64,000 bases of DNA from Paramoeba atlantica (GCA_977017575.1 CDRNVI010000035.1:1-64000); one strand, 5' to 3'. Shown: positions 20,159 through 44,986, counted from the stretch's first letter. Made by a program: numbers and translations. Notes: generated by a model from the letters alone, not told the origin.

Positions 20159-23100
20159 ATGTTCACGCGTCAATTCACCTGCAGAGAACGCGACTACGAA
20201 GACCAGAATGTTGATTTCACCAGAGAAGCTAACAGGCATGAACTCGGATCATGGAACCAATTTGCCGCTAACGAAAAACTCACGAACAACAAGCCAAGTA
20301 CATACAACGATTTGCTTTATACAACAGGCATACCCGCACACACATCGAAAGAGTGGAACGAGAAACTAACACGCGTCGTGGAAGAGATAGGTGTAGGCAC
20401 AACGCCGGATCAAGGACACGATAAGCATCGAGACGAAGAGGACAGGTATTCCAGTGTGACAGCCTCTAAAACGCAGGAACCTCCAGTCATAAAGAAGCTT
20501 TCAAACGGAATGCAGCTGCGACCCAGAGCTTCTCCCAATTCAAGTCAGACACAAGAAGCTATTCGAATCAAATCTAGCCCACACTCGGGGTCAAAACACG
20601 AGAGAAAACTTAAACCACCACCATCAAAGCAGATAAAATGCACTGGAAGAATCCCACAACGCAAGGAAACCGTATCTGACTCATCTGAGAATTCCGACGC
20701 CAGCACCACATCGATAGAAAGCACCATGTCGGACATGGCAACGGATAGCGAAGATCACGGGGGAGACGCAGATATGTCAGCTGACGAGAACGACACGCAC
20801 ACGGATTTTCAAAAAGCACCAGACCAAATCCACCGTACGATTCGCTCTTGGGGAAAGGGAACGAAATGCAAGGTTAATTGGAAGTTTAGGAACACAGAAA
20901 CCTTGTATCAGTCGACGGGCGAAGTGATTGCAAGATGGTCAAGAAGGGGAAATGTACGCGTAAAGGTCCAGTATGCACCAGCGAACGGGGAGGGTCCAAG
21001 CGGAATTTTGCATCTCCCATCCTCCTACAAGATCGAGATACACGACCTACGAGCAACGGAGTTAACAAGAATCCCAATGAATGCAATACACGAAATCGAG
21101 ATCCCTGACGTTCCGGAAACAGACATGGGCAACGATCTAGACCCTCTGCCGTCTCTCGCCCACATCGACCCAGGTTTCGCAGTACACGTGATAGCAATCT
21201 TTCGGGCAATCATTCGAAACTACCCCAAACTTCAGTTGACGTCGGAGAAGACAGCCATGTGGCACAAATTTTTGAACGCGCCACGCGAATCCCTAGCAAC
21301 GGTGCAACAGGCAGTCACAAGAAAACAGAGCGCCCCAAGGAAGCAGAAACTACAACACGTCGAATGGGAATCAATGTCACAAGGGGAAAAAGAAGAAATG
21401 GAGGTAGACCGCAGATCCATCCGAAATGCCTTGAAAAATGCTCGAGCCAGCAACATCAGTAAAGCGACACGCATTCTTGACAACGTATATCTAGACTCAA
21501 CCCTAAGCATGGACGAAAAAGTCAAAAAGCTAAGACAACTACACCCAGAAGGAACACCCCTCTTAGCCACAACATCCGACTTTCCTCAGATTGGCGTGGT
21601 CGAAAAACACGAGATTATATCGGCAATAAGCAAACTTGCACCAGGAGCGGCCCCGGGACCTACAGGCTTAAGCGAAAGCATGTTGCATCTCCTTGCCAGT
21701 GACGAAGAATCATCGACAGCTCTATCTCACATGATACGCGATGTAATAAACGGGGAGGTATGCGAAACAGTCCGAACGAGATTAACAAGATGCCGACTTT
21801 TGGCCCTGAACAAACCCATGAACGGAGTACGCCCAATCGCAGTAGGAGAAACGCTCTTAAAAGTGTGTGGTACGATTCTCCTCCAAAGACACGAAGAAAA
21901 GATTAAAGACTTTTTCCATCCGGTTCAATGCGGTGTCCTGCAAAGAAACGCATGCGAAGGAATAGTTCACACCATAGCAAAAGAATATGAGGAGGGATAC
22001 ACCATCCTAGCAGTTGATTACGCGAATGCCTACAACACACCTACACGACAATCAATCTACGACGCCCTGAAGAAGTACAATATCTTCAAACCCTTCATGC
22101 GACTATTTGCCCTAGAGTACGGAGCTCCATCAGATTTTCTCTTCTTTGCGAACGACACTCTACATTCTACGATAAAAAGTACCTCAGGAGTACGACAAGG
22201 ATCAGCGCTCTCATCACTGTACTTCTGCGCCCTCATCCAGGATTCCCTGAAAGACATAGAAGAGCTCTTCCCAGAAGTCAAGGTAAGAGCGTACATGGAT
22301 GATATTACACTCTCCTCCCGCGATCCAGCTACGCTCGAAGCCGCATTCCTCCACCTACGCGAAGCATCAAACGATTTGGGACTGAAGGTCAACTTCTCAA
22401 AATGTGAATGGTTCAAAAAAGCGAGCGACTCAGCATACAATCAAGAGCAAACCCCGCAGTCGCTGCAAGATCTGGGAATGAGTGCAACGCATGAAACTAT
22501 CAAAATCTTGGGCGCGTACATTGGAAACGATCAGATCGTCAGCAACCTCCTAGTTCGCAAGCTAGAAAAACACAAATGTCTGTTTCGGCGACTTTATCGT
22601 ATGGGTCCCAGCAATCTCTCCCTCGCTATTCTGCAAAAGTGTACTAACCCCAGACAAGACTACCACATCCGAGTGCATAAACCCGACGCCTCTTTGGAAC
22701 TGGCGCAACAATTTGATACAGAAATCGGCAATATAGTTTCCCATTGGTTTCAGGCAAGAGGAGATTCATTAAGGCTAGCTTCATTGCCCGAAAAACTCGG
22801 AGGACTCGGCTTAACACCATCATGCTTGAAGCACAAATACTTCTACAGTGCGTCTCGTCGATCCATTGAAGAGCAAGGAAAATCTCTTAACGCTCCGGTG
22901 GAGAAATCGAAACACACTAAGAAGATTTCAGTGCTGCCAGAAGACAAATCAACAGCAAGCAAGATGGCTACGAAAGCAATCAGGGGAGAGCAAAAAATGA
23001 TCGCCGCTGAACTGCGAAGAAACAAAAAACTGAATGATATACTCGATCGCACGACAAATTCCCACAACCATCTGCACTCCACGAGCAACTATGTGAACCC

Positions 23101-23812
23101 CTATCTCTTCAGATATAGTGTCATGATGCGCCTAGGTTGCACGCCCCCCGAAATGCCAGACCTCATTCCATGCCCTGGATGCTCAACCGAACTGTCTGCA
23201 AGCAACGCCCTGCACCACGTAGCCGGATGTACACAATGCTCTGGAGTTAATGCTACAAGAAAGCACACACATCTTATTCGGTTCCTTGGGGAATTGTGCG
23301 CGAAAGCTGGTCTGCCGCACGTGCTCGAACCAAGAGTTCATACATCATTCTACTGCACGAAATGCAAGGCCTCCATCTCGGATGAAGCAGTTGAGAACCA
23401 TCCCTGTAAAGCGCGACGCATAAGATCAGGACCTGACCTTGGGATCATGTGGCCTACCATCGGAGAGGTGCTATACGACTTAACGGTAGTACACACATGT
23501 GCGCCAAGCCACATAAAATCAACTCCTGAACAACTGATGCAGAATGCTCTGGAAAGAAAGAACAAGAAGTATGTGGTGGAAAAGGGTATTCCAACGCAGG
23601 AATTTAGTTGCCTAGCGGTTACAGAGTTCGGACAACTCCATCAAAATACCAGGCGATTGTTGGAGTGCTTAGCGAAACGGTCGGAAAGAAATGTCAATGA
23701 AGTCAAGGAAGCGTTTCAGCTAGAGATTGAAAAGATGAACGCCTACACTGTAGCTAATCAACTGAGAAAGTACATGACACCAACTCAATGGCTGGGAGAA
23801 CTCCAACAATAA
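20159..23812 (+). CDS. Intact non-LTR retrotransposon family A2 (CRE/SLACS-like): LsmAD-like domain, beta-rich domain, RT, CCHC finger, restriction-like endonuclease
   Basis: Single ORF; VDYANAYN, GVRQGSALS, AYMDDI, LGGLGL, CPGC..HHVAGC, RKH, PDLGI..YDLTVVH; relict SL at 20107-20126. Confidence 0.93.
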   Translation: MFTRQFTCRERDYEDQNVDFTREANRHELGSWNQFAANEKLTNNKPSTYNDLLYTTGIPAHTSKEWNEKLTRVVEEIGVGTTPDQGHDKHRDEEDRYSSVTASKTQEPPVIKKLSNGMQLRPRASPNSSQTQEAIRIKSSPHSGSKHERKLKPPPSKQIKCTGRIPQRKETVSDSSENSDASTTSIESTMSDMATDSEDHGGDADMSADENDTHTDFQKAPDQIHRTIRSWGKGTKCKVNWKFRNTETLYQSTGEVIARWSRRGNVRVKVQYAPANGEGPSGILHLPSSYKIEIHDLRATELTRIPMNAIHEIEIPDVPETDMGNDLDPLPSLAHIDPGFAVHVIAIFRAIIRNYPKLQLTSEKTAMWHKFLNAPRESLATVQQAVTRKQSAPRKQKLQHVEWESMSQGEKEEMEVDRRSIRNALKNARASNISKATRILDNVYLDSTLSMDEKVKKLRQLHPEGTPLLATTSDFPQIGVVEKHEIISAISKLAPGAAPGPTGLSESMLHLLASDEESSTALSHMIRDVINGEVCETVRTRLTRCRLLALNKPMNGVRPIAVGETLLKVCGTILLQRHEEKIKDFFHPVQCGVLQRNACEGIVHTIAKEYEEGYTILAVDYANAYNTPTRQSIYDALKKYNIFKPFMRLFALEYGAPSDFLFFANDTLHSTIKSTSGVRQGSALSSLYFCALIQDSLKDIEELFPEVKVRAYMDDITLSSRDPATLEAAFLHLREASNDLGLKVNFSKCEWFKKASDSAYNQEQTPQSLQDLGMSATHETIKILGAYIGNDQIVSNLLVRKLEKHKCLFRRLYRMGPSNLSLAILQKCTNPRQDYHIRVHKPDASLELAQQFDTEIGNIVSHWFQARGDSLRLASLPEKLGGLGLTPSCLKHKYFYSASRRSIEEQGKSLNAPVEKSKHTKKISVLPEDKSTASKMATKAIRGEQKMIAAELRRNKKLNDILDRTTNSHNHLHSTSNYVNPYLFRYSVMMRLGCTPPEMPDLIPCPGCSTELSASNALHHVAGCTQCSGVNATRKHTHLIRFLGELCAKAGLPHVLEPRVHTSFYCTKCKASISDEAVENHPCKARRIRSGPDLGIMWPTIGEVLYDLTVVHTCAPSHIKSTPEQLMQNALERKNKKYVVEKGIPTQEFSCLAVTEFGQLHQNTRRLLECLAKRSERNVNEVKEAFQLEIEKMNAYTVANQLRKYMTPTQWLGELQQ

Positions 23813-24292
23813 ACAAGTAGCAGCTGATTAATGCAACGAATATTAATATTACCGATCCAGCTAGCGCCTGTCCGAATACCAAACGTTTGTTTAATTCACC
23901 CCTTTTTTGTTTTTTTTTTCCAAACTCGAATACGTAAAGCAAAGATATGGAATAGCAATAACAAAAGGAAAAGGGGCTCGGTCCTTTTTGAGACTTTAAG
24001 GACAATACATCCGTTCCTCTCTTCTGTCCTTTTCTATGAGTTTACGATATGAAATTTAGGATACTATAACTGAAGTTCTTAATTTTGTGGATGGGGGGTT
24101 TTGCACGTCCTTTCCTAAGCATATTCCCCCATCCCCTGTTTATACACCCCTCGTTTATACACCCCCCATTTAAATATGTAAAGATGCATATGAACGAAAT
24201 TAGGATTATATTGTTTAATATCGTTCCAACTTTAAAACTAATACTCAAATATTTTTTTTTAGGTAGTTGGTCAAGATTATCAAGTAGTTATC

Positions 24293-29157: not shown

Positions 29158-32100
29158 TTTTTTTTTTTTTTTTTTTGAATCGCGGCATTGCCTCTATATT
29201 TTGACCCAGTAGACGAACCAAGTACATAGTAGGTCCATTGGGGGGGTATACGAGTTGAAAACAAGCAATCAAATTAGCAATTTGAAAATTTAGCTTTTTT
29301 TTTTTTTTTACTAAAAACTAGCAAACAATTCTACCCGAAATCCACCCGTAATCAAATCACTCCCGCACCAAAACTAAGACCCGTGACGGCACGTCGGTTA
29401 GTGACTTGGTACCCCCCCTTGCCCCCCTCCCTTTCGCAGAGAAACACCCTCCCCCCCCTGCGGCTGTTAAATGATTGGGGGGGACCGAATTACTCATCGT
29501 TCCCATATCCAAGGAGGGCCGTGTCAGGGACCGCCGCGGGAAGTCGGAGTACCAGCATCCGAGCCTGTGTCCGCATCAGAGTGATGTTAAGTGACGTCAC
29601 CAATTGGTGTAAGGCTTCCCCGTTCGAAAGGGTACCCCCGGAGTATGCCGCACGAGAGACGGAAACCTCCTTGAGGATCGCAAAGGCGCTTGGACTCCAC
29701 GCTCCATAAGATTCCACGACCATCGCTCCAAATCGATGGCGTGCGAACTCTGCTTCCTCTCTTTGCTTCTTTTTGTTTTCGGTGGCGTATCGTTCCGCAA
29801 AAGACCCCGCCGTCACCCAGTTAGCATCACGGACTAAGTCCGTATACTTTGGTTGCTGAACATGAGTGACGGCGAAGTCTAATACAAGAGACTGGCCTAG
29901 CCCGATTGTAGGGATGAACACGTCTCCGGGCCTGGTGAGGGCGCCCCCAGGACCCTTGTTGCCCAGACTCACTTCTCTCCGCGGGGTGAAACCGGCCTTT
30001 TTACTTCAGAAGTAAACTGTGCCGCTAGTGCGTTGTGGCGTGCGATTATACCATGCCCGCTTTTGCACCCCAGAGCGGGGTGCCTCGGGATCTAGAGGTA
30101 GCGTACATTTTTCCATAGGACAAGGCCGGGACGCTGGATAGACTGGGTCCCCTAGCCACCAGCGTGTGAGGGTGCGAAACTCCGTCGGTGTGAAAGCCAG
30201 ACCGGTTTTCTTGGAGGGGATCACAAAAGCCCATTCTGAGGCTCCTTCTCCTGTTTCTGATATCCACCTGGCCCGTGTGCGAAGGTCAGCTTTCGCAAAT
30301 GCCTCGTGAAATTCCTGGTTGGCGATGGCGTGGCTAAGGTCGCGTTGTCGGGGAATCACCAGTTCTGTTCCGGATTCCTGCGCGTCGGTATACGGAGAAT
30401 CAGTCGCCAAAGCCATACTTTTCGGAATTTTGCCGCCTTGTTGGACCACCGTCTTTCCGGCACGCCTGTTCACCTCCCGCACGGCATGGTCAAAGCCCTC
30501 AGCGTCCGCTGGGTCCCAACGGTCTTTGTCCGTTGAGAAAGCTACGGAGGCAACGTAAGCCGCACTCGAATGTTCCCCCGCCGACCGAAGGCCCAACCCC
30601 CCGTACCGCTTTTCGCGTTGCGCCTGGCGTCGCGCCCCATCACTCAAAGGACGGAAGAAGTGTTCAATAGTGCGCTGGACGGCATCATCTAAGCGTTGGC
30701 AGATATCTTGAAGTTCCGTTGTCGGGGTAGTCCTGAGCGAGTAAACCATTTTACAGAAACCAGTACAGTGGCGTATGAGGGAAAGGGCCACCTGGGGATC
30801 TTCAAGTGTAGCTATGGCCTCGAGAGATTCCTCTGCCATGTCGATTGTGTTCTTGAGAAAGAATTCGCGGCAAAATTCTGTCGAACCAATTGGACTCCCC
30901 AAAATATGAAAATTTCCTGCCGAATTCGTGTTCAGACCGGGGATGTCAGGGAAAAGTGAGCAACGATGGGAGGAAGCTGGGTGTGTTGCGATCTCGCACT
31001 TGGCCACGTTGATATGCAATCCCCATTTCGGGCCGGACATCGCGATCACGTCTAGTGCGTGCCGAACGTCGCAGGGATGGACCGGTGAGTATCCCGTCGT
31101 CTAAGTACCACAGGTTTAAAGCGAGTTTCGGAGCGGCAGTGTGGATTTGTAGGGAAACTTCTTTCATCACAAGCGAAAAGAGCAGAGGGCCCAGGGGGTC
31201 GCCTTGTTGCACCCCTTCAGATGATTCGATAAAGCGTGAGCCAAAGGTCAGAATGCTCTGAGTGTTGTAACACCACTCCACGTACGCACCCAGCTCAGGG
31301 AAATGCTGGCGTGTTAGGGCCACAAAGAAATCCCGTGAGACGTTATTGAAAGCGTTTTTGAGGTCGACTTTGCATAGCAGGAAGTCGTCATCCTCAATAT
31401 GTTCGGCGAAGGTCTTCCGACAGAGGTGGATGATGCGCTCGGCTCCAGCAGGTGTGGCTACGCCGTACTGGTGCCCTCTGAAGAGTTTTCGGGCCTTGAA
31501 TTTTGCGGAGAGGCAGGCAACTTTGCTTGCCAAGCGGCGAAGGGTTTCTCCGGCAGCAATTGGACGAACATCGTGTTCACCCTTTTTCAGAGCGCATAAC
31601 CGACCACCCGCAAAATAATCTTTGACTTCCAACGGTGCTTTTCCTGCGAGCAAGTGATTGGTAAACTTCGTAAGCGTGCCCAGAGGATCGGTGTACGCGT
31701 CGTGATGGTACTGCATCGCGGCCTGAACGTGCTCCGGCCGCATACCGAAGGCCCCTCCCGAGGACCCTCGGTGGAAAGTCGCTAGGGCCTCGGCTACTTC
31801 GTCTTCCGTTGCTTCAAGCGGTTTTGCTTCCGGCGCTGAAGGGCTTGCCACGTTGAAAGTGCTGTCAAGTCTCTGAGGATGCTTTGCCCGGAGCTTCGAG
31901 TAGGTGGCGTCGTCGTCAGGGGCAAGTGGTTCCGAAGTTAATGCTGTCATGGCGCGGGAGAGCTCCGCGTCGCGGACAAGCCGTTCTGCCCGTAAAGCCG
32001 CTTTCTTTACTTCTTCGTCTATGGTAAGCGCTTGTGGTACATTTTTCTTTTTGCGTGATACACTCGAGACAGCTTCTTTCCAAAGCGCCAGGAAATCTTT

Positions 32101-33619
32101 GTTGGACCATCTCGCGAGGCACTTCTTTACATGGGAGGCGTAAGAGGCTTTTGCGCGGTTACCTCCGCGATGAGGGGCGGGTAGGACGCATTTGGGCAGC
32201 ATGGCGAGGAGTGTCCATGCCTCGAGCGTGTTCTCTCTCGCTGCTGTGGATAAGCAACCGCAGAGTGTTTTAGCCCATTCTTGGCAACTGTTGGGGATGT
32301 CCTTGCAAGTGTTAATAAGTAGCGCACTGATAGAGGATAAACTCGGAAGGGGTGTGTCGGAGACTTTCACGTTTTCGCTTACTACGCTTTGATGAGAGGG
32401 TGTGGAAGGTGAGTTAAGGGCAGGCAGAGCATTCGAGTCCACATTGGGGCTTAGAACAGGATCGGCACTGCTCGTCGAGGGCGACGGACGGCTTTGAGGA
32501 GAGGAATGGCGGAACATGCAGATCTTGTCGTGGGTTTCCCGTTTGCCTTGATCATAATGTTTATTGCAATCATGACACCTAAAACGTCCTTCGTCTTTCC
32601 ACCACTCGTCTGGGACCTCATCACCGTGTCTGTTTGCTACGTGGTTGTGGAATGCCTGCCATTGGCCCCCGTGGGGCCCTGTTTTCCAAGTACATCCCTC
32701 GAAGGGACATTTTCGCGTATTTTCATGCGTGGTGTGTGTTTTTTCTATCGCACAGTTTTGGGTTGGGGTCGGTTCGGGGGCATTGTTCATTGTTTCAGCT
32801 TTGGGGGCGTCAGGGGAGGTAGTTTTCGACACCTGCTGGGGACGTTTACGTTTGCCTACAGCCGTTTTCGGGGTTAACTTCTTCAGGGGTGATTCAGCCG
32901 GAGAGCTGTGAACACTTGTTGACGCATCTGTGGAGTCACGGTCATCACTGTCGCCCCCAGACTCGGTGCATAACTGGGTATGTAGCTGGGAAAGTGAGAT
33001 CCCTTTAGGGCGCTTTTTCTTTTTCCTTACTTTGGTTCCACCGCTCAACGAAAAATCGAGGTCTTGAGGCGTCAGGTCGGGGAAAATTAATTTGTCGTCG
33101 TCATAATTGTATTCGGTACGAGCTATCCCCCGGTTGTGGCGCTCGCATTTCTCCTTCACAGCCTTGTTTGTAGATTTCGATTGGCTGAGTGAAGAAGGAG
33201 CGGCCCCTTCGAACTGGAAAACGGAATTCTCGGTGGGACGGACGCTGGAAAATAATTCTTCTTCCGAGCTCGTTTGCTGACGCCCTGTGTCTGGTGTCAC
33301 GCCTTCGATGGAGTTCGTAATGCTGAGGGCAATGTCTTCGGCCCGTTGTTCTAATTCTGATGAAGGATCCGGCGGAAGTGGTGTCGTATACAGCTCTTCC
33401 TTGTATGTGCTAGCGCCTTTAACCAGGTCTTTGTTTGCCTGAAACTGGTCCCATGAACCGAGCTTGTGCGCGCCCGCTTCGCGATCAAAGTTGGATTCCT
33501 GTTTTGCTTTAGAGCGAGTTAGAACCATGGAACGTGAGAAAGATTAAGAAAATAAATCAACAAGGTACAACAAGGTACAGAAACAACAAGGTACAGAAAC
33601 TGTATCTTTATCGTTAAAG
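29158..33619 (-). mobile_element. Full-length non-LTR element B: SL, 5-prime UTR, ORF, 3-prime UTR, poly(A)
   Basis: T-run at about 29158-29177 abutting the satellite; SL plus two relicts at 33558-33619. Confidence 0.9.
29490..33528 (-). CDS. Family B RT-REL polyprotein with LsmAD-like N-terminus and Zn fingers; two 1-nt frameshifts (about 31070 and 30140)
   Basis: KVDLKNAFN, GVQQGDPLGP, WYLDDG, GGLGL, RPGDVFI..LDFAVT; three ORFs collinear with intact family C. Confidence 0.9.
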
Positions 33620-34028
33620 TTTTTTTTTTTTCTTGTCTTTGTTTTTTTTTTTTTGTTTGATTCTGGTTTACAGCTGAATTTTCCGTTTTTTTTTTTTACG
33701 GGACATATGTGCGATATGTGAACACGTGTGATATAGGAAAGAATTGCCTCTTCAGGAGGTTTTCTAAAAAAAACTTTTTTTTTTTTTTGGTGAGCTCAAA
33801 ACTAGCAAATGTATGTAAAGCCCAACCAAACCGAGCAAACCCAAACCAAGCAAACCCGAAACGAGCAAACCTCAACCTGCCACCTCTCTCACTACCCCGG
33901 ACCTTATTGCCCGCAGGACCGTCAGACGCTGGCCACAACCCCCCTGCAGAACCAGGAACCAAACAAAGCAACCACGACACTTACCGCCCCACCCTTGCCC
34001 ACGAGGTTTTCCACCTCTTGGCCGCTTG

Positions 34029-37000
34029 CTACTCTTCCTTCCCGTACCCCAGGAGAGCCAGGTCGGGGCCCGTTGCGGGTAATCGCAAGACTAGCATTCG
34101 GGCCTGCGACCTCATCAGTGTTACATTCAGAGCTGTGAGAATCTGATGTAAGGCCGCCCCCTTCGATATGTCACTGCCCGATTTAGCCGCCCTAGCTACT
34201 GCGACCTCTCGGAGAACAGACATTGCGCTGGGACACCACGAGCCGTAGGATTCTACGACCATGGCTCCGAACTTAAAGTGTGCTGCAGTCGCCTCTGCGC
34301 GTTGCATGCTCTTGTTCACGGTGGCATATTGTTCCGCGAACGACCCCGCCGTCACCCAGTTAGCGTCACGGACTGTGTCCGTATACTTTTGTTGCTGGAC
34401 ATGGGTGACAGCGAAGTCGAGTACAAGGGACCGACCGAGGTGGCTGTCTATAAAGACATCTGCAGGCCTAGTGAGGGTGCCCCCCGGACCCTTGTTTCCC
34501 AGGCTGACCTCTCGTTTGGGGGCGAGCCCGGCCTTGGAACACTCCGCCGCAAACTGTGTTGCCAGAGCATTGTGTCGGGAAATGATACCATGCCCGCTTT
34601 TGCACGACATCGCGTGATCCCCCTCTGGACCAAGCGGCTGCGTGCATTTGTCCATGGGGCAAGGTCGGGTGCCGGGGTATATGTTCTCCCCAAGCCACCA
34701 GCGTACCAGCATCCGGAACTCTGTCGGGGTATATGCGTGACCGTTCTTCTTGGAAGGCAAAACAAATGCCCACTCCGACGCTCCTTCCCCCGTTTCAGAG
34801 ATCCATCGGGCCCTCGTCCGCGGGTCAGCGGTATTAAGCGCGTTGTTGTATTCCTGGGAAGAGATCGAGTGACTGAGATCCCGTTGTCTGGGAACTACCG
34901 CTTCATTTCTAGATTCGCTCGCTTCGATAGTACTAAAGAGGGAACGATCTGACACAACCATGCTCTTGGGTATTGTGCCATTTTCGCCGTCTACCAGATT
35001 TAGTCCAGCGCGATTGTTGACATCGCTCACTGCTTCTTCGAAACCTTTTGCTTCGGTGGGGGCCCAGCCATCCTTCCTTGATGCGAATGCCACGGAGGCC
35101 ACGTAAGCAGAAGAGGAATGTTCTTCTGCTGAACGGAGCCCTAGCCCTCCGAAGCGCTTGTCTCGTTGTGTCTGTCGCCGGGCGTCATCGCCAAGTGGGT
35201 GGAAAAAGTTTTCGACAGTGGACTGAACAGTGTCGTCCAGGCGTCGACAAATATCTTGCAGTGCAGATGTCGGGGTGGTACGGAGAGAGTAGACCATCTT
35301 GCAGAAGCCTGTACAATGCCGGATGAGGGAGAGAGCGATCTGGGGATCCTCGAGCAAAGTTATAGCGGTTAGGGAATCTTGGGCCAGTTCGAAGGCATTG
35401 TCCAAATGGAATTTATGACAGTATTCAGTGGATCCGACTGGGCTACCTAAAATGTTAAAATTACCCTCTAAATTTTTATTCGGGCCAGGGATGTCAGGGA
35501 AAACGGAGGCGCGAGGGGATGATGAGGGGTGTAAGGCGAGTTCACATTTAGCGGCGTTGATATGGAGTCCCCGTTGTGGTCCTTTGATTTCCAGCACGTC
35601 GAATGCGTGCCGCACATCAGCAGATGATCCAGCCAGCACCCCGTCGTCCAGATACCACAGATTCAAATCGAGCATTGGGGCTACCGCGTGAATTTCCGCC
35701 GCTACTTCTCTCAGGACCAGGGAAAAAAGGAGAGGACCTAAGGGGTCGCCTTGTTGCACTCCTTCAGAAGACGGAATGGTGCGTGTTCCGAAAGTAAGTA
35801 GGCTGTCCGAAGAGTAACACCAATCTACGTAGTGACTGAGAGCGGGAAAGTGTTCGCGAGTAAGGGCAATGATCCAGTCCCGTGAGACATGGTTAAATGC
35901 GTTTTCCAGGTCAATTTTGCATAGAATGAAGTCATTGTCGTCAACGTGAGAATCGAATGTCTGTCTGCATCGATGGATGACGCGCTCAGACCCTGCTGGA
36001 GTGGCCACACTGTATTGGTGTCCTTTGAAGAGCTTACGAGCTGTTGTTTTGGCGGAGAGACAGGCGACTTTGCTCACCAGGCGACGGAGCGTCTCTCCGG
36101 CCGCTATTGGCCGCACGTCGCGCTCCCCTTTCTTTAAAGCGCATAAGCGGCCTCCAGCGAAATAGCACTGAACTTCGAGCGGCACTTGCCCCGCGAGCAT
36201 GTGGTTCGTAAAGTCGGTCAGTGTACCCAATGGATCCGTACGGCCGTCATGGTGGTACTCTAGTGCCACTTGTACGTGTTCAGGGCGTAGCCCAAAAGCG
36301 CCACCCGATGACCCCCGGTGAAAAGTTGCAAGAGCCTGCGTTACGTCTTCCTCTGTGGCTCGAAGTGGTTTTGGTCCCATTTCCGTCGATGAACTGAGGG
36401 GTTTCACCGACGTAGCGAGTCGGGATGGATGCTTAGCTTGGAGTTTAGTGTAAGTATCATCGTCATCCGGGGCTACTGGTTCAGAGGTTAGGGCAGCCAT
36501 GGCTCGAGATAGTTCCGAGTCGCGAACGAGTCTTTCAGCTCGCATAGCAGATTTGGTTATCTCGTCCTCCGGACTCTGTGCTTGTGCGACGCGTTTTTTG
36601 TGTTGTAGGCTCGCAATTGTTTCGTTCCAAAGGGGGAGAAATTCTTTCCGTGACCACCGGGCGAGACACTTCCGAACGTGCGAGGCGTACGATAGTTTTG
36701 CCCTGCTCCCCCCACGATGAGGTGCCGGTAGTACGCATTTCGGTAGCATGGCGAGAAAAGTCCAGGCCTCAACTGTATTGTCTCGTACAGCGGAAGAGAG
36801 ACACTCACAGAAGACTTTCGCCCACCCCTGGCGACAGCTGTTGGGAATGTCTTTGCATGTGTTGAGAGGTGTCGAACAGATTGACGCCAGGGAGGGAAGG
36901 GGTTCGGCGACGGCTTGTGCGGCAAAAAATGCAGGGTTGTCCCTCGGGTCGCCCCCTGTCTGTGTAGGTTCGGAGATAGGTGGGGGAGAAGAGCAGCGGA

Positions 37001-38018
37001 AAGCGCAGTTTTCGGCATGGGTGACCTGTTTGCTTAGGTTGTAGTGCCTGTTGCAATCCCTGCATCGGAAACGTCCCTCCTCGTTCCACCAGGTATCAGG
37101 CACCTCGTCCCCGTGTCTGTGGGATACATGGTTATAAAAGGATTGCCATTGGCCCCCGTGAGGCACAGTTTGCCATGCACATCCCTGAGAAGGACATTTC
37201 CGCGTGTTTCCATTGACTGTAGGTGGCTTTTCTGGAGTGGTATTGGGGGGTTGATTGAGCCTTTCGGTATCTGAGGAATCGCGTGGCCCTGATTTCGACA
37301 CCTGCACGTGACGTTTACGCTTACCCGTGGGGGTGTTAGTGTTCTGTTCCTTTTGGGACAATTTGATAGACGGGCTGTCCATGACTCCGGTGGCATGAGT
37401 GCGTGGCCCGGGTGAATTCGCGCTGGACTCTATATTGTCGCGTTCCTCGCTGTCGGCCCCGGACACTGCACCCAGCTGAGAAAGATTGATGCCCTTCGGG
37501 CGTTTCTTCTTTTTACGGCCTTTACTGCTACCCTTTACTGAGAAGCGAAGATCAGGAGGCGTGAGATCGGGAAAAACTAGCCTGTTATCAGCATAGTCAT
37601 ATTCGGCACAGCCTTCCCTGCGGTTATGGCGCTCGTACTTCTCCTTCACAGCCTTGCTAGAGGACTTTAATTGGCTGAGTGAAGAGGAATTGGCTCCTTC
37701 GAATTGGAACTCGAGGCTTTCCGTCGGGCGGACACTGGAGAACAGTTCTTCTTCGGTGGTAGCATTCTGGTGTCCTGTGTCTGGCGTTTCGCCTTCTGTG
37801 GAGTTCTTAATGTCGCAGGCAATCTTGTCAGCGCGCTCCAATAATTCAGATGAGGGATCAGGTGGAAGTGGCGTGGTATAAAGACTCTCCTCGAATGTAC
37901 TCACCCCTTCGACTAGATCTTTATTGGCTTCAAATTGATCCCAAGAGCCAAGCTTGTGCGCGCTAGCTTCGTGCTGGAAGTCGGTACCCTGCTTAGCTTT
38001 GGACCGGGTTGTCACCAT
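34029..38018 (-). CDS. Intact family C RT-REL polyprotein with LsmAD-like N-terminus and Zn fingers
   Basis: Single ORF starting MVTTRSKAK; CPSQGC..H..H and CRDC..H..C fingers, IDLENAFN, QGDPLGP, YLDD, RHN, RPADV..LDFAVT; SL at 38052-38081, A-rich tail at 33620-33790. Confidence 0.93.
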   Translation of the reverse strand: MVTTRSKAKQGTDFQHEASAHKLGSWDQFEANKDLVEGVSTFEESLYTTPLPPDPSSELLERADKIACDIKNSTEGETPDTGHQNATTEEELFSSVRPTESLEFQFEGANSSSLSQLKSSSKAVKEKYERHNRREGCAEYDYADNRLVFPDLTPPDLRFSVKGSSKGRKKKKRPKGINLSQLGAVSGADSEERDNIESSANSPGPRTHATGVMDSPSIKLSQKEQNTNTPTGKRKRHVQVSKSGPRDSSDTERLNQPPNTTPEKPPTVNGNTRKCPSQGCAWQTVPHGGQWQSFYNHVSHRHGDEVPDTWWNEEGRFRCRDCNRHYNLSKQVTHAENCAFRCSSPPPISEPTQTGGDPRDNPAFFAAQAVAEPLPSLASICSTPLNTCKDIPNSCRQGWAKVFCECLSSAVRDNTVEAWTFLAMLPKCVLPAPHRGGSRAKLSYASHVRKCLARWSRKEFLPLWNETIASLQHKKRVAQAQSPEDEITKSAMRAERLVRDSELSRAMAALTSEPVAPDDDDTYTKLQAKHPSRLATSVKPLSSSTEMGPKPLRATEEDVTQALATFHRGSSGGAFGLRPEHVQVALEYHHDGRTDPLGTLTDFTNHMLAGQVPLEVQCYFAGGRLCALKKGERDVRPIAAGETLRRLVSKVACLSAKTTARKLFKGHQYSVATPAGSERVIHRCRQTFDSHVDDNDFILCKIDLENAFNHVSRDWIIALTREHFPALSHYVDWCYSSDSLLTFGTRTIPSSEGVQQGDPLGPLLFSLVLREVAAEIHAVAPMLDLNLWYLDDGVLAGSSADVRHAFDVLEIKGPQRGLHINAAKCELALHPSSSPRASVFPDIPGPNKNLEGNFNILGSPVGSTEYCHKFHLDNAFELAQDSLTAITLLEDPQIALSLIRHCTGFCKMVYSLRTTPTSALQDICRRLDDTVQSTVENFFHPLGDDARRQTQRDKRFGGLGLRSAEEHSSSAYVASVAFASRKDGWAPTEAKGFEEAVSDVNNRAGLNLVDGENGTIPKSMVVSDRSLFSTIEASESRNEAVVPRQRDLSHSISSQEYNNALNTADPRTRARWISETGEGASEWAFVLPSKKNGHAYTPTEFRMLVRWWLGENIYPGTRPCPMDKCTQPLGPEGDHAMSCKSGHGIISRHNALATQFAAECSKAGLAPKREVSLGNKGPGGTLTRPADVFIDSHLGRSLVLDFAVTHVQQQKYTDTVRDANWVTAGSFAEQYATVNKSMQRAEATAAHFKFGAMVVESYGSWCPSAMSVLREVAVARAAKSGSDISKGAALHQILTALNVTLMRSQARMLVLRLPATGPDLALLGYGKEE

Positions 38019-38081
38019 AGGGCGTAAGGATGATATAAAGGGAAAAGAAATCAACAAGGTACAGAAACTGTATCTTTATCG

Positions 38082-39214: not shown

Positions 39215-39730
39215 CTACTGCAAAACAAGTGCCGGTTGTGGATCTTCAGCCGGCATGCGTGAGACAATCATTCTCGATTGAGAACGCATCAGGGTGAGGT
39301 TAAGCTCTTGAAGCAGCTGACGGGTAGCTGCTTCTTGAGATAGAGTCCCCTGGGAACATGAGGCGCGATGCTTCCCAACCCATCTAAGGATTGATAGGGC
39401 ACTTGCACTCCAAGCACCATATGATTCTACCACCATGGCAACAAACACATGTTTTGCTTGTTCCGCCTCCTCTCTCTCTTTCACCTTGTGAGAAGCGGCG
39501 TAGTGCTCCGCAAATGATCCTGCCGCCACCCCGTTAGCGTTGCGGACTAAGTCCGTGTATTTAGGTTGCTGAACGTGGGTGACAGCAAAATCAAGCACCA
39601 GACCTTGAGCTTTCTCATAGCCCGGAATAAAGACATCGCCCGGCCTCGTGGGACAGCCGCCAGGCCCTAGGTTCCCCAGGCTTACCTCACGTGAAGGTGA
39701 TAAATTCGCCTTGGATGGTGATGAATTCGC
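39215..39730 (-). pseudogene. 5-prime-truncated REL domain of a B/C/D-type element, with its 3-prime UTR at 38830-39214
   Basis: REVSLGNLGPGGCPTRPGDVFI..LDFAVTHVQ..MVVESYGAW. Confidence 0.88.
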
Positions 39731-40409: not shown

Positions 40410-40641
40410 CAAAGATGACGAAACGAAGGACGCGTACTCCAAGGAAGTTGCAGAAGAAAAGCTACGGAACATGACGGTATCTAAACAATCGACGAATCGC
40501 CCGGCCTTTCTCTGCTACCGCTGCCACAAACCAGGTCATTTCCGAGCGAACTGCCCGTTAAATCAATCGTCTACTCGCTTGACCCCGGGTTTTCGCGGAG
40601 GGGTGACGAGCGGCACTTCGAGTGCAAAGAGGAGTCACTAG
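40410..40641 (+). CDS. YR retrotransposon Y1 gag C-terminus with CCHC zinc knuckle (5-prime truncated; not in ORF track)
   Basis: Translates to ...AFLCYRCHKPGHFRANCPL...GFRGG...SH-stop. Confidence 0.8.
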
Positions 40642-40644
40642 GTA

Positions 40645-41793: not shown

Positions 41794-42432
41794 CTCAAGA
41801 GGATGTCAACCTTTGTTTCGATCAAATACCGCACGTTAGGCGATACAGTGTTATTTGCGCGCGGCGCACTTCCCGTCTTGCACGTCCCGAAGACATGAAC
41901 CTCCCCCTACACGTTAAGGCTGGAATACCCGTAATGGACGTGCAGAAAGTGAAGACTTGGATGTCCCCTGGTGCGCTTCACCGCCTGGAAACCGTGATGA
42001 GACACTTATTTGACACGCGACTTGCAGCGCAGACCGAACCAGCAATCAAAGGTAATCTTTCGGAAGCTGATGTCGTTGGTTTGCTTGACGCTGGAGTGAT
42101 TGAAACAGTCGAACAGAAAGAACTCCATCAGCATCCGACTTTACAATACGTTATTCCTTTTACCGTAGTTGAATCCGATGAGGAGGGGAACGCCCGGCGC
42201 CGATTCATATCCTGGACCAAGGACGACAATATCAGATTAAAGGACTATAAGCCCGACGTTCCTTTATTGCACCCTTCTTGGTATCTGCATAAGGCTGAGG
42301 AAGAAGCAGGCGTTAAGCGCGACTTACGTTGCGGGTTCTACCAAATCGGAGTTCCGCGCGCGGGCACGTGCCAAATTTCGTTTTCGTGACCAAGATGGAG
42401 TCTTGCACCAGATGAAAGTTATGCCCATGGGG
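40701..42432 (+). CDS. Y1 reverse transcriptase with a long N-terminal extension overlapping YR; truncated at the PMG motif
   Basis: LPLHVK, FTVVE..RRRFISW, KRDLRCGFYQ, then after a frameshift FRFRD..KVMPMGH. Confidence 0.85.
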
Positions 42433-42433
42433 C

Positions 42434-44986
42434 ACCGAGGCCGAATCCCCCGTGACGTTTGTGTCTTTGTATTTGGTCCTTGGCATTAGCATCGAGGGGA
42501 AAGAGTGCAATTTCGACAGCCTCTGTTAAGTGTTTGTCGAGCTCTTGAGGCAGTTCTCCGAGGGCTTGCGGGGGAGTAGTCCTTAGAGCGTAAACCATCT
42601 GGCAAAAGCCGGCACATTGTCGTATTAAGGAGAGGGCGACTTGGGGATCTTCTATCAGCGTTGTGGCCCCTAGGGTTTCGCTGGCTGGATCGATGGCATG
42701 GGTCCTAAGGAAGTCCGTACAGTGTTCTGCCGAGCCAACTGGGGTACCTAGGATCTCAAAATTGCCGTTGTACCGTATCTTTTCGCTTGGTATGTCCGGA
42801 AATAAAGTCGACGTATGTGCTGACGCTGGGGGTGTGATAATCTCGCACTTGGAGAGGTTTAGAAAAAGTCCCCACTTTGGACCGACCTCTGCTAGAATGT
42901 CCAAAGCTTTTCTGACTTCCTGGGGTTCCCCTATTAGCACCCCGTCGTCGAGGTACCAAAGCTGATTTAGAAGATGGGACCGGGATGCTATGTCCTCCGT
43001 TACCTCTGCCAATACCAACGAAAATAATAGGGGGCCCAGGGGATCTCCTTGCTGTACTCCCTCCGCTGAGGGGATAAAGGAATTATCAAAGGTAAGGCAG
43101 CTGGGGTTTGCGTAGCACCACTCCACCCATGGTGACAGCTCGGGAAAATGCTTACGTGTAAGGAAAATAAAAGCTGGTCTGCTCACGTTATTGAATGCGT
43201 TTCGGAGGTCTACTTTGCAGAAAGTTATATTGTCGTTTTCCAGATTGTTGAACATTAGTCGGCGGCAGAGATGAATGACTCGCTCTGATCCGGCAGCCGC
43301 TGCAACCCCGTACTGCCTGCGACCGAAGAAGGATCCCGCCTTTTCTTTTGCGGAGAAGCAGGCTGCTTTGCTCACCATCCGTCGAAGGGTTTCTCCTGCT
43401 GCAATAGGTCTCACGTCGTCCTCTCCCTTTTCTAGTGCGCAAAGTCTGGCTCCTGCGAAGAAAGGGTGTGCTTCGTCAGGAGCTTTACCCGCCAGGAGAT
43501 GATTCGCGAAGGAAGTGAGTGCTGAGAGGGAGTTTAAATTATGGTCCACATGTTCTAGGATAGCTGCTTGCAGATGTTCTGGTCGTAGCCCCATGGCTCC
43601 AGCTGAAGATCCGCGGCGAAAACCGTTAACAACTTTCTTTACCTCCGATTCGTCAAGTTGCAAAATGCTTTCTTCCAATGGTGGAAGCGGGCAGGTGATG
43701 GGATTCCCGTGAGGACTAGGGTGTTTTTCCTCTAGCTTTTGAAATGTTTCGGCGTTGTAAGGGGCTAGTGGCGCGGCGGTAAGTGCAGCCATTCCCCGGG
43801 AGTATTCACCTTGACGGGTTAGAATTTCTGCTCGTATGGCAGCCTTCTCCGCTTCGTTCTCATTGCTGAGAGTGTTCCCTTTGGAAGGCTTTCTTTCGTG
43901 ATCAGAGACAGCCTCGTCCCATAGGGTGGCGTGTTGTCCTGCAATCCAGAGTTCCATTCGCTTCATGACGTAAGAGGCATATGAAATGCGTCCTCCTCGG
44001 TGTGGAGCTGGAAGTACACACTTCGGGAGCATGGCAAGGAGCGTCCACGCCCTGGCCGAATTTTCATCTACCGCGGAGGAAAGGGCTGCTGTCAGTATCT
44101 TAGACCATAAGTGTCGACATCGATGCGGAACGTCCTTGCACGTGCTTATTGGGGTTGTACAAACTGTCTCCAGCGGTGGTAGGTTGCCTGTGCCCTGAAC
44201 ATCGTAAATAGCCTCGCCTAGGCACTCTGATGTTTGTGAGGGTGAAGTGGTTTGCACGGCTCGTCCTTTGCAGTGCTTCGGATGTGATGTTAACTTGTTG
44301 ACGTCGTAATGTCGGCCGCATGCGTTGCAGAGGAATCGTCCCTCTTTCTCCCACCATTCGTTGGATACGCTGTTCCCGTGTCGGTAAGCTACATGGTTGT
44401 AGTAAGACTGCCATTGTCCGCCGTGAGCTTGGGTTGTCCAGGAGCAGTTTTCTGCAGGGCATTCTCGTTGTCCAGGGTGATCTTGGGAGGGCGGTGCTTC
44501 GCTGTGGTGTGATCGATGTGGGGTTGTAGGTTCTATCGTTTCCTCTTTTCTTGGCGTAGCCTTCTCTCGCACTTTTTGATGAGATTTCGCGATTCCTCGA
44601 GTGTGCCCCTTAGCGTTTGAAGGTGTCATGCATGATTTGCGTCGGGCAAACTTTTTTGTAACGGAGTCTCCGTCGGACTGTGTCTCTTGGCCTGATCCGA
44701 GGACTCGTGAATGGATTGTTTCCTCGTCGCCGATATTTTCTTGTCCTGTGTCGGGTGTTTGTTTCTCGGCTGAAATCAGGGCCGCATTTTTATGCCATCC
44801 GTCCGGAATGTTGGTAGGGATCGGTGTTGTATAGAGCAAATCATTGTACGTACTCGGCTGCTTGATCAGGTGAGCATTTCCAGCGAATTGATCCCAGGAT
44901 CCTGTTTCGTGTGATACTTCCTCACGTAAAAACGACTCATCATCCATCGAGGGGGGTGTTTCATGTAAGGGATCGCCTCCGGACAT
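42434..44986 (-). CDS. Family D RT polyprotein with LsmAD-like N-terminus, 3-prime truncated at the junction with Y1
   Basis: GSWDQF..STYNDLLYTT, Zn fingers, KVDLRNAFN, QGDPLGP, YLDD; SL at 45035-45070. Confidence 0.9.

What the first reader, a model, noticed from the sequence alone, without database searches (positions are those of the whole stretch)
20246..44902. Non-LTR retrotransposons carrying an ataxin-2/Pbp1 LsmAD-like domain at the N-terminus of the RT-REL protein
Seen: four diverged elements start with the same ~70-aa block (A2 20246-20458, B 33241-33459, C 37731-37949, D 44702-44902). In C it reads GSWDQFEANKDLVEGVSTFEESLYTTPL..ERADKIACDIK..TEEELFSSV. Established, recalled from memory: the LsmAD domain (Pfam PF06741) of yeast Pbp1/ataxin-2 has the pattern WDQF..NE..FGV.ST[FY].E.LYTT...A.RIA.EI...DEE.LYS.V. 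All three sub-blocks are matched in order and spacing. I know of no CRE/SLACS/R2/NeSL element with this domain. Inference: a host mRNP-granule domain (LSm/LsmAD is reported to interact with DDX6) was captured and kept under selection across families. It might tether the RT to its own poly(A) RNA, route the RNP to granules, or compete with host ataxin-2.
Basis: partly seen in the sequence, partly recalled or inferred. Interest (0 to 1): 0.93.

Follow-up and report, generated by a model that had tools for sequence, protein, structure and literature searches.

The report
Retrotransposons carrying a host LsmAD domain
Many families of jumping genes in this spliced-leader protist begin their protein with a real, selectively maintained copy of the LsmAD domain, so far treated as the hallmark of the host mRNA regulator ataxin-2/PBP1; I found this fusion nowhere else, and it could help show what LsmAD does.

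Summary
The window holds six such blocks, not four. Pfam LsmAD (PF06741) matches C (35.8 bits), B (31.2), A2 (24, borderline) and D (16.4, partial); the cut-off is 25. A profile-profile comparison with 28 ataxin-2 LsmADs gives probability 99.8%, E 7e-30.

The block sits 20-50 residues into a single ORF, followed by a linker, a zinc finger in the C-type only, the RT, and an R2-like CCHC/restriction-like endonuclease. There is no Lsm domain and no PAM2 motif.

At least 150 loci in the 45.7-Mb genome carry it. At least 15 families are involved, from two RT lineages only about 23% identical. dN/dS between families is 0.05-0.14, like the RT.

A strongly supported branch (100/95) groups the element domains with the host's own PBP1 LsmAD, apart from all other LsmADs sampled. 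Close relatives of the elements without LsmAD exist in metagenomes.

I found no LsmAD-RT fusion in 1.84 billion representative proteins, in 47 metagenome LsmAD loci, or in the literature.

The mechanism is inferred: most likely a fold-on-binding adaptor to partners of host PBP1. Whether there was one capture or several stays unresolved.

The scan holds 33 first-reader notes of the same thing elsewhere in this genome.

The parts
2901..3163 (+). A-type copy A0: LsmAD block split by a frameshift (5' remnant)
   Evidence: Element-LsmAD profile, 80.8 + 17.5 bits in two frames; 96-98% identical to A2
13132..13395 (+). A-type copy A1: LsmAD block in an open frame of only 246 aa (5' fragment)
   Evidence: Profile 113.6 bits; 97% identical to A2 over 144 aa
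20110..20126 (+). Spliced-leader 3' remnant directly upstream of the A2 5'UTR
   Evidence: Sequence read; identical to the 3' end of the full leader seen
20159..23812 (+). Element A2 ORF (A-type lineage), uninterrupted: LsmAD, linker, RT, CCHC/REL; no zinc finger
   Evidence: only 23% identical to C in the RT
20216..20479 (+). A2 LsmAD domain
   Evidence: Pfam PF06741, 24.0 bits for the block alone, E 5.4e-5; element profile 111 bits
21809..22513 (+). A2 reverse transcriptase (RVT_1)
   Evidence: Pfam 75.3 bits, residues 568-802 of the frame that starts at 20108
23171..23494 (+). A2 CCHC motif plus restriction-like endonuclease core
   Evidence: Aligned with the C-type C-terminal domain; C, P, H, C, R and D columns are invariant
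29493..33528 (-). Element B (C-type), full length with a frameshift near 30.9-31.07 kb
   Evidence: tblastn with C: residues 1-845 at 33489-30898 and 788-1316 at 31070-29493; ORF
33214..33489 (-). B LsmAD domain
   Evidence: Pfam 31.2 bits (34.4 for the block alone)
33558..33700 (-). A-runs, a near-full-length (37-nt) spliced-leader copy, then two shortened leader 3' pieces, directly upstream of the B 5'UTR
   Evidence: Sequence; A-runs
34029..38018 (-). Element C ORF (C-type), uninterrupted, 1329 aa: LsmAD, linker with NLS-like KKKKRPK, zinc finger, RT, CCHC/REL
37704..37979 (-). C LsmAD domain
   Evidence: Pfam 35.8 bits, E 1.1e-8, model positions 5-71 of 72; 41% identical to the host PBP1 LsmAD over 85 aa
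37005..37193 (-). C-type zinc-finger region (CP..GC.W ... H...H motifs)
   Evidence: Conserved block, 0.52-0.65 mean pairwise identity; dN/dS 0.07-0.11
35532..36134 (-). C reverse transcriptase (RVT_1)
   Evidence: Pfam 59.8 bits; best solved relatives are R2 proteins 8gh6, 8ibw and 9nl2
34365..34667 (-). C CCHC motif plus restriction-like endonuclease core
   Evidence: AF2 model of the last 290 aa (pLDDT 79.5) matches R2 proteins 9dou_A, 9nl3_A and 8gh6_A at Foldseek E 2e-5 to 2e-4, followed by PD-(D/E)xK nucleases
38052..38081 (-). 30-nt spliced-leader remnant after an A-rich tract, directly upstream of the C 5'UTR
   Evidence: Sequence
42419..44987 (-). Element D (C-type, another family): ORF that ends within the region after the RT
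   Evidence: 46% identical to C over residues 179-948
44681..44932 (-). D LsmAD domain (short-middle variant)
   Evidence: Pfam matches only positions 5-22, 16.4 bits; element profile 111 bits
45035..45070 (-). Near-full spliced leader after an A-run, directly upstream of the D 5'UTR
   Evidence: Sequence

Best explanation
What it is. The blocks are genuine LsmAD domains (PF06741). Each forms the N-terminal module of the single protein of an R2-like (restriction-like-endonuclease) non-LTR retrotransposon. The order is LsmAD, a linker (NLS-like in the C-type), a zinc finger (C-type only), the reverse transcriptase, then CCHC plus a PD-(D/E)xK nuclease.

Where it came from. The domain shares exclusive ancestry with the LsmAD of the host's own PBP1/ataxin-2. 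It was most likely captured from that lineage. It has since been kept by purifying selection in at least 15 families of two very distant RT lineages, at 150 or more loci.

How it works (inferred). Isolated LsmAD does not bind RNA and folds poorly on its own. The elements carry it without the Lsm domain and without PAM2. I therefore read it as a fold-on-binding protein adaptor. It would connect the newly made element protein, still on its own trans-spliced and polyadenylated mRNA, to whatever host factors normally dock on the PBP1 LsmAD. In kinetoplastids the PBP1 complex (MKT1, LSM12, XAC1, PABP) stabilises the mRNAs it is tethered to and activates their translation. In flies, Lsm/LsmAD is sufficient for association with polysomes. 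The gain for the element would be a better-expressed RNA and/or a protein that stays with its own RNA.

Likelihoods: domain identity at least 0.95; host-lineage origin about 0.8; selection about 0.9; this particular mechanism about 0.45.
For: Shown:
- Domain identity: Pfam hits above the cut-off; hhalign probability 99.8%, E 7e-30; reciprocal profile search.
- Architecture: same frame as RVT_1. The C-terminal fold matches R2 proteins.
- Abundance: at least 102 PF06741 matches in the genome, 37 of them in open frames of 1190 aa or more. At least 150 matches with the A2 N-terminus.
- Selection: LsmAD dN/dS 0.05-0.14, against RT 0.05-0.12 and linker 0.15-0.32. Mean pairwise identity is 0.5-0.6, against 0.18-0.27 in the least conserved linker stretches.
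- Origin: the host PBP1 (SM-ATX + LsmAD) scores 79.9 bits with the element profile, against <= 62 for ordinary ataxin-2 proteins. It is 63% identical over 51 aa to family L054. A 100/95 branch unites 19 element domains with host PBP1, host P0042-like and two metagenome proteins, against 37 other LsmADs. The YTTx(I/L)P motif is shared with the host-lineage proteins (PBP1, P0033, P0042-like; not META_L071), where others have YTTxLD.
- Relatives without the domain: P0006 and P0007 (31% identical to C over 965 aa, same layout) have no LsmAD.
- Template RNA: every copy is preceded by spliced-leader sequence, and B, C and D also by A-runs, so the template is a mature mRNA.

From papers:
[quoted passage not shown] My AF2 model has pLDDT 67.
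- Tethering PBP1, LSM12, MKT1, XAC1 or PABP to an mRNA raises its expression in T. brucei (bioRxiv 10.1101/2020.03.02.973057).
- Lsm/LsmAD is sufficient for polysome association (review PMC5485521).
- A 2026 review calls LsmAD the unique hallmark of ataxin-2, with no known partners (PMC12898128).
Against: - No partner was identified. The one complex prediction (element LsmAD with the host PBP1 Lsm domain) gave no verdict.
- The LSM12 AD domain was not detected in the genome, although that search also matched nothing in the control genomes.
- The elements have no MKT1-binding HNPY motif and no PAM2 motif.
- I obtained no RNA evidence for the elements.
- In ataxin-2, LsmAD is described mainly as a helper of the adjacent Lsm domain. 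In diplonemid proteins each LsmAD sits next to an RRM. Both facts favour the cis-helper rival.
- The direction of transfer (host to element) is inferred from distribution, not proven. The short domain cannot resolve the order of events (AU tests).
Confidence: 0.5

Rival explanations
1. Cis-acting helper. The LsmAD does not recruit host proteins. Instead it stabilises or tunes a nucleic-acid-binding part of the element's own protein (zinc finger, RT N-terminal extension), as it does for the Lsm domain in ataxin-2.
For: LsmAD modulates folding and RNA binding of the preceding Lsm domain and does not bind RNA alone (PMC11898529). In the diplonemid proteins P0017, P0030 and P0032, the LsmADs that Pfam resolves lie directly before an RRM-like stretch (borderline Pfam RRM_1 in P0017 and P0030), not an Lsm. 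This suggests LsmAD generally works beside an RNA-binding domain.
Against: In the elements the LsmAD is separated from the next folded domain by 150-250 poorly conserved residues. A-type elements lack the zinc finger yet keep LsmAD. The partner domain would have to differ between lineages that are 23% identical.
Confidence: 0.25
2. Decoy or competitor. The element LsmAD titrates partners away from host PBP1, or blocks a PBP1-dependent restriction of element RNA (for example, routing to granules). It acts as a dominant-negative mimic.
For: The element domain is close to the host's own PBP1 LsmAD. It lacks the Lsm and PAM2 parts that give PBP1 its RNA and PABP contacts. There are many copies with uninterrupted frames.
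Against: A decoy need not be fused to the RT, and a fixed N-terminal position in every family points to action in cis on the element's own RNP. The host PBP1 LsmAD shows no sign of rapid arms-race change, though this was not tested. There are no functional data.
Confidence: 0.12
3. Reverse direction. The domain is old in the elements, and some host LsmAD genes (the 360-aa P0042-like protein with a C-terminal LsmAD) derive from element 5' ends. The likeness to PBP1 would then reflect shared constraint only.
For: The host P0042-like LsmAD falls inside the element polytomy in the careful tree, on a long branch with weak support.
Against: PBP1 with SM-ATX + LsmAD is the ancestral eukaryotic architecture. 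The closest relatives of the elements outside this genome lack LsmAD. The 100/95 branch holds host PBP1 itself.
Confidence: 0.08
4. Chance motif resemblance, or an annotation artefact: read-through from a host gene fragment, or a mis-assembled chimera.
For: The domain is short (about 70-90 aa). D and A2 fall below the Pfam cut-off.
Against: hhalign gives E 7e-30. The block occupies the same position in 150 or more loci of many families, directly after spliced leader, 5'UTR and ATG. dN/dS is well below 1. The element is present in contigs of several independent runs.
Confidence: 0.02

Closest known systems
R2 and other restriction-like-endonuclease (RLE) non-LTR retrotransposons (R2, R4, NeSL, CRE/SLACS/CZAR, Hero)
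   Same: A single ORF. RVT_1 whose best solved relatives are R2 proteins. A C-terminal CCHC plus PD-(D/E)xK domain whose predicted fold matches R2Tg and R2Bm. An N-terminal zinc finger in the C-type. A-rich 3' ends.
   Different: The N-terminal LsmAD is not reported for any of them in the literature I could search. It is absent from the 100 nearest named Atlas clusters, which instead show PHD, Peptidase_C48, zf-RVT or RNase H as add-ons. The copies carry spliced-leader sequence at the 5' end and lie in element-rich DNA, not in rDNA or SL genes. The clade within the RLE group was not determined.
CRE1/CRE2, SLACS and CZAR of trypanosomatids
   Same: Euglenozoan host. RLE-type single-ORF elements that are associated with spliced-leader sequence.
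   Different: By established knowledge, those elements insert at a fixed site inside the SL RNA gene exon. Here the 3' end of the leader abuts the element's 5'UTR and follows an A-run or another element's tail. So the leader came from the mRNA template, not from the target site. No LsmAD is described for them.
Ataxin-2 / Pbp1 / kinetoplastid PBP1
   Same: The LsmAD domain itself: W-D-Q-F, N, S-T-Y, L-Y-T-T, acidic E-E ... S-x-V, over the whole Pfam model. It is closest to the host's own PBP1.
   Different: No SM-ATX Lsm domain, no PAM2, no long disordered C-terminal half. The middle of the domain is shortened and carries an element-specific T-P-D-T-G-H motif. It is fused to an RT and a nuclease.
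Other non-LTR elements with captured accessory domains (NeSL-1 Ulp1/C48 protease, PHD fingers, RNase H, esterase or RRM in ORF1 proteins)
   Same: The same evolutionary pattern: a host or foreign domain is added to the element's protein and kept by selection.
   Different: The domain is of a different kind. LsmAD has no known enzymatic or nucleic-acid-binding activity, and a 2026 review (PMC12898128) holds it to be exclusive to ataxin-2.
Diplonemid PDZ + repeated LsmAD-RRM proteins (D. papillatum KAJ9472136.1, Flectonema neradi EP01060_P028870)
   Same: LsmAD used outside ataxin-2 and without an Lsm domain, in Euglenozoa.
   Different: These are cellular multi-domain RNA-binding proteins with no RT. 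Their LsmADs form a separate, well-supported clade (100/99) away from the element and host-PBP1 group. They are absent from this genome.

Membership tests
LsmAD domain family (Pfam PF06741) | Score at or above the curated gathering cut-off (25 bits) | tested here: met
   C 35.8 and B 31.2 bits. 85 matches in the genome score over the cut-off alone, and 15 more with neighbouring matches in the frame. A2 scores 24.0 and D 16.4, below the cut-off, but both are joined to the others by the element profile at 111 bits each.
LsmAD domain family (Pfam PF06741) | Match over the whole model, with the conserved WDQF / STY..LYTT / EE..S.V blocks in order | tested here: met
   Model positions 5-71 of 72. 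hhalign against 28 ataxin-2 LsmADs: 84 columns, probability 99.8%, E 7e-30.
LsmAD domain family (Pfam PF06741) | Same fold as ataxin-2 LsmAD | tested here: inconclusive
   The AF2 model has pLDDT 67 and pTM 0.29. The three nearest Atlas shapes are LsmAD clusters, but TM is only 0.34-0.38. No solved LsmAD structure was found by sequence. The domain is reported to be poorly folded alone (PMC11898529).
Ataxin-2 / PBP1 protein family | SM-ATX (Lsm) domain preceding the LsmAD | tested here: not met
   Only 20-50 residues precede the block. There is no PF14438 hit in any element, while the host PBP1 has one.
Ataxin-2 / PBP1 protein family | PAM2 or another PABP-binding motif | tested here: not met
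   No PF07145 hit at E <= 1. No PAM2-like pattern by regular expression.
RLE-type (R2-like) non-LTR retrotransposons | Reverse transcriptase of the non-LTR type in a single ORF | tested here: met
   RVT_1 at 46-75 bits in all four copies. The best solved relatives are R2 proteins.
RLE-type (R2-like) non-LTR retrotransposons | C-terminal CCHC motif plus PD-(D/E)xK restriction-like endonuclease | tested here: met
   Invariant C, P, H, C, R and D columns. Foldseek matches R2Tg and R2Bm at E 2e-5 to 2e-4, followed by PD-(D/E)xK nucleases. Sequence searches of the PDB found nothing.
RLE-type (R2-like) non-LTR retrotransposons | Target-primed insertion marks (3' A-tail, target-site duplication) | tested here: inconclusive
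   A-runs follow the 3'UTR of C. The copies lie head to tail with other elements, so I looked for no clean flanks or duplications.
CRE clade (CRE1/2, SLACS, CZAR) | Site-specific insertion inside the spliced-leader RNA gene exon | tested here: not met
   The leader's 3' end abuts the element 5'UTR and is preceded by A-runs or other elements. No split leader flanks the copies.
CRE clade (CRE1/2, SLACS, CZAR) | RT phylogeny groups the element with CRE reference elements | not testable with these tools
   No reference CRE, NeSL, R4 or Hero sequences could be fetched. The word-based search found only 8 relatives, none named.

The most novel reading that the evidence does not exclude
LsmAD is an autonomous, portable docking module. 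The elements use it to hijack the host's PBP1-centred mRNA-activating complex (MKT1/LSM12/XAC1/PABP in kinetoplastids), or the polysome, for their own RNA. It has moved between two unrelated retrotransposon lineages, and perhaps back into host genes. If so, these elements are a natural 'minimal LsmAD' experiment. They would make the unknown partner and function of the defining ataxin-2 domain directly testable.
Probability: 0.3. Interest if true: 0.85.

Novelty: new variant of a known kind. Interest (0 to 1): 0.72.

Why it matters
LsmAD is the signature domain of ataxin-2, a protein involved in SCA2 and ALS. A 2026 survey (PMC12898128) states that practically all LsmAD proteins are ataxin-2 orthologues and that nothing is known of LsmAD's partners or function.

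Here the domain works without Lsm and without PAM2. It has been kept under strong selection in many retrotransposon families, so it must have a function of its own.

For transposon biology, this is a new kind of host-domain capture. In an organism whose gene expression is controlled after transcription, the element appears to have taken a piece of a central post-transcriptional regulator.

It also adds to evidence, including the diplonemid LsmAD-RRM proteins, that LsmAD is a more widely used module in Euglenozoa than is assumed.

Tried and rejected
- Word-based protein searches with the element LsmAD region and with the host PBP1 N-terminus found nothing useful. That tool's sensitivity is limited, so the blanks are not evidence.
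- No solved structure of an LsmAD was found by sequence. The endonuclease domain was not found in the PDB by sequence or profile; only the fold search found it.
- Complex prediction of the element LsmAD with the host PBP1 Lsm domain gave no verdict (score 0.02). This is neither for nor against binding.
- The LSM12 AD domain (PF09793) was not found in the genome, but that search also matched nothing in the control genomes, so it says nothing.
- The element proteins have no MKT1-binding HNPY-type motif and no PAM2-like motif.
- Sequencing runs: four runs of one study, of unrecorded library type (none on record as RNA), hold the element. The only run guessed to be RNA (17 M letters, contigs) matches just the spliced-leader part. 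Expression is therefore neither shown nor excluded.
- A literature search for the leader sequence returned nothing, and the organism stayed unnamed.
- AU tests could not decide the history of the domain. C-type monophyly with A-type outside gives p 0.41, all elements as one clade p 0.48, and A-type with host PBP1 (independent capture) p 0.15.
- I rejected my own argument that LsmAD is 'too similar' between the A- and C-types (40% against 23% in the RT). About 36-45% is the floor of identity for any pair of these domains, host PBP1 included.

Full report
**1. The observation**

- A2: 20108-23812 (+), an uninterrupted 1234-codon frame.
- B: 30946-33528 (-). It continues after a frameshift to about 29493.
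- C: 34029-38057 (-), an uninterrupted 1342-codon frame, with the ATG at 38018.
- D: 42419-45040 (-), which ends after the RT.

Each begins, 20-50 residues after its ATG, with a block of the pattern H..G-S-W-D/N-Q-F ... N ... S-T-Y/F ... L-Y-T-T-x-I/L-P ... T-P-D-x-G ... E-E ... S-x-V. A profile built from the elements places the blocks at 20216-20479, 33214-33489, 37704-37979 and 44681-44932. It finds two more A-type copies at 2901-3163 (frameshifted) and 13132-13395.

**2. Is it LsmAD?**

- Pfam PF06741 matches model positions 5-71 of 72 at 35.8 bits (C), 31.2 (B) and 24.0 (A2 block alone). In D it matches only the first third, at 16.4 bits. The cut-off is 25.
- Seventeen element blocks (alignment A1) compared by hhalign with 28 ataxin-2-type LsmADs (alignment A2) give probability 99.8%, E 7e-30, over 84 columns.
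- The A1 profile, searched against 1.84 billion representative proteins, finds 1420 proteins at E <= 1e-3. The non-element hits I inspected are SM-ATX + LsmAD + PAM2 proteins and other LsmAD proteins, apart from one bacterial Ig-repeat protein, P0031.
- The AF2 model is of low confidence (pLDDT 67, short helices). Its three nearest Atlas shapes are LsmAD clusters, at TM of only 0.34-0.38. This fits the report that isolated LsmAD has little stable structure (PMC11898529).

The homology is settled by sequence. The fold test is inconclusive.

**3. What carries it**

All four ORFs have RVT_1. The nearest solved RTs are R2 proteins. The last 290 residues hold invariant C-P...C...H...C and R-P-x-D ... 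D columns. They fold with pLDDT 79.5 into a domain that Foldseek matches to R2Tg and R2Bm (E 2e-5 to 2e-4), and next to PD-(D/E)xK nucleases.

C-type elements also have a zinc-finger region and, between LsmAD and finger, conserved 'FPDLTP' and 'KKKKRPK' motifs. A-type elements have no finger.

These are therefore single-ORF, RLE-type non-LTR retrotransposons. No element has an Lsm (SM-ATX) domain or a PAM2 motif.

Every copy is preceded directly by spliced-leader sequence. D and B have a near-full kinetoplastid-type leader after an A-run, C has 30 nt, and A2 has 17 nt. The copied template is thus a mature trans-spliced mRNA. The elements are not inserted in SL genes the way SLACS/CRE elements are.

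**4. Abundance, diversity and selection**

The window lies in a 45.7-Mb assembly of 248 contigs. A six-frame PF06741 search gives at least 102 matches, of which 37 lie in open frames of 1190 aa or more. The A2 N-terminus finds 150 scored matches out of 280 candidates.

Twenty-one full frames fall into about a dozen C-type families, 49-82% identical to each other. The A-type lineage is only 22-23% identical to them. The A-type lineage itself has several families, and at least two of them carry LsmAD.

Among 12 C-type families the LsmAD block has a mean pairwise identity of 0.5-0.6. The RT has 0.6-0.8 and the least conserved linker stretches 0.18-0.27.

For pairs that are not saturated, dN/dS in the LsmAD block is 0.09-0.14, with an overall range of 0.05-0.14. 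This compares with 0.05-0.12 in the RT, 0.07-0.11 in the zinc finger and 0.15-0.32 in the linker. The domain is under purifying selection between families.

**5. Where the domain came from**

The host PBP1/ataxin-2 gene lies on G000 contig C44, with an allele on C66. It has SM-ATX (31.5 bits) and LsmAD (49 bits).

Its LsmAD is 63% identical over 51 aa to family L054, and 41% identical over 85 aa to element C. Scored per domain with the element profile:
- host PBP1 gets 79.9 bits;
- a metagenome protein, P0033, gets 85.9;
- a second host protein with a C-terminal LsmAD (P0042-like) gets 67.7;
- every ordinary ataxin-2, and each diplonemid LsmAD, gets 62 or less.

In a careful ML tree, a 100/95 branch separates two groups. 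One holds the 19 element domains, host PBP1, P0033, metagenome protein L071 and host P0042-like. The other holds 37 other LsmADs, including a euglenid (Ploeotia) protein and the diplonemid repeats.

The element domains share Y-T-T-x-I/L-P with the host-lineage proteins PBP1, P0033 and P0042-like, where others have Y-T-T-x-L-D. They alone carry T-P-D-T-G-H in a shortened middle.

Relatives of the C-type elements from other organisms (P0006 and P0007; 31% identical over 965 aa; same finger-RT-RLE layout) have no LsmAD.

I read this as capture from the host lineage's PBP1-type LsmAD. It is an inference from distribution and tree, not a proof of direction.

**6. One capture or several?**

P0006 and P0007, which lack LsmAD, are much closer to the C-type (379 bits) than the A-type is (92 bits). 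In the domain tree the A-type nests among C-type families (96/69). That hints at transfer of the module between lineages.

However, AU tests reject none of three alternatives: vertical inheritance (p 0.41), a single element clade (p 0.48), or an independent capture by the A-type (p 0.15). The 40% identity between A- and C-type domains is simply the floor seen for any pair. The question is unresolved.

**7. Is it known?**

Full-text searches for LsmAD with retrotransposon or reverse transcriptase, and for ataxin-2 with non-LTR retrotransposon, found nothing relevant.

A 2026 survey of ataxin-2 chimeras lists many added domains, but no RT or transposon. It calls LsmAD the unique hallmark of the family, with no known partners (PMC12898128).

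In the 1.84-billion-protein library, all proteins with an element-type N-terminal LsmAD come from one ENA assembly. That set contains proteins identical to genes of this genome, so it is the same organism.

None of the 100 nearest named Atlas clusters combines RVT_1 with LsmAD. None of 47 metagenome LsmAD loci has an RT within its flanks.

The limits of this search are as follows. Only the best 150 library hits are listed. Eukaryotic element ORFs are often not annotated. Repbase could not be consulted.

**8. How it probably works (inferred)**

Isolated LsmAD does not bind RNA (PMC11898529). The elements lack Lsm and PAM2. A direct poly(A) or RNA tether through this domain is therefore unlikely.

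The most economical reading is a protein adaptor that folds on binding. It would link the nascent element protein and its mRNA to the factors that normally dock on the PBP1 LsmAD. In kinetoplastids, tethering any member of the PBP1 complex raises mRNA expression (bioRxiv 10.1101/2020.03.02.973057). Lsm/LsmAD suffices for polysome association in flies (PMC5485521).

Rivals are a cis-helper role for an RNA-binding part of the ORF, suggested by the diplonemid LsmAD-RRM units, and a decoy of host PBP1.

My one binding test gave no verdict. No RNA data were obtained.

**9. Verdict**

The mechanism is open. This is a new variant of a known kind of element, so far seen only in this genome.

The scan holds 33 first-reader notes of the same feature on other pieces of the same genome. 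These are not independent evidence.

Noticed in passing
window 33558-33700 (-), 38052-38100 (-), 45035-45085 (-), 20110-20126 (+): Each element copy is preceded by spliced-leader sequence. In B, C and D the leader follows A-runs. Upstream of B, a near-full-length (37-nt) leader copy is followed by two shortened leader 3' pieces. This implies reverse transcription of mature trans-spliced mRNAs and head-to-tail joining of different RNAs.
   Followed up: partly
window 74-916, 9882-11192, 17794-19088, 24287-26116 (+); 39224-39715 and 63623-64000 (-): Further 5'-truncated pieces of A-type elements (41-58% identical to A2) and C-type elements (60-72% identical to C). The window is largely retrotransposon DNA.
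   Followed up: partly
L061:1390-2472 (-) = G000 C48 about 75.4-76.5 kb; allele on C90: A host gene of 360 aa with a C-terminal LsmAD (Pfam 26.4 bits), no Lsm and no RT, next to ordinary genes. On a long branch it falls with the element domains in the tree. It may be an old paralogue or a domesticated element 5' end.
   Followed up: partly
G000 C21:2268-11630 and C22:111510-155647: Tandem units spaced about 2.28 kb apart. Each has an LsmAD-bearing open frame of only 168-224 aa. They may be amplified element 5' fragments or a tandem host gene family.
   Followed up: no
P0017 (Diplonema papillatum KAJ9472136.1), P0030 (Flectonema neradi), P0032: Diplonemid proteins with a PDZ domain (Pfam hit only in P0017, just under the cut-off) and two or three LsmAD-RRM units, and no Lsm domain. 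This is a second non-ataxin-2 use of LsmAD. It is absent from this genome.
   Followed up: partly
L071:2112-2598 and L072:1293-1711 (JGI metagenome contigs): A protein with LsmAD about 55-65 residues from its start, carrying the element-like 'VDF..E...H..GSWNQF' lead-in. The contigs end 215 aa in, so what follows is unknown. There is no spliced-leader sequence in the DNA upstream.
   Followed up: partly
L070:429-1481 (P0033, JGI metagenome): A 350-aa protein whose C-terminal LsmAD is the best non-element match to the element profile (85.9 bits). Its N-terminal 250 residues have no counterpart in this genome.
   Followed up: partly
L033:3650-4642 (-) = G000 C163 about 168.6-169.6 kb: A canonical LsmAD (WDQF..N.ELFGV) split by an intron-like gap, on an AT-rich contig. 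It may be a second paralogue or DNA of another organism.
   Followed up: no
window 37200-37700 (-) and the same region of other C-type families: Conserved linear motifs 'FPDLTPxDLxFS' and 'GRKKKKRPK' (NLS-like) lie between the LsmAD and the zinc finger in the C-like subgroup of C-type families (C, L038, L040, L044, L045, L052, L054, L056); they are absent from families L041, L047, L051 and L057 and from A2.
   Followed up: no
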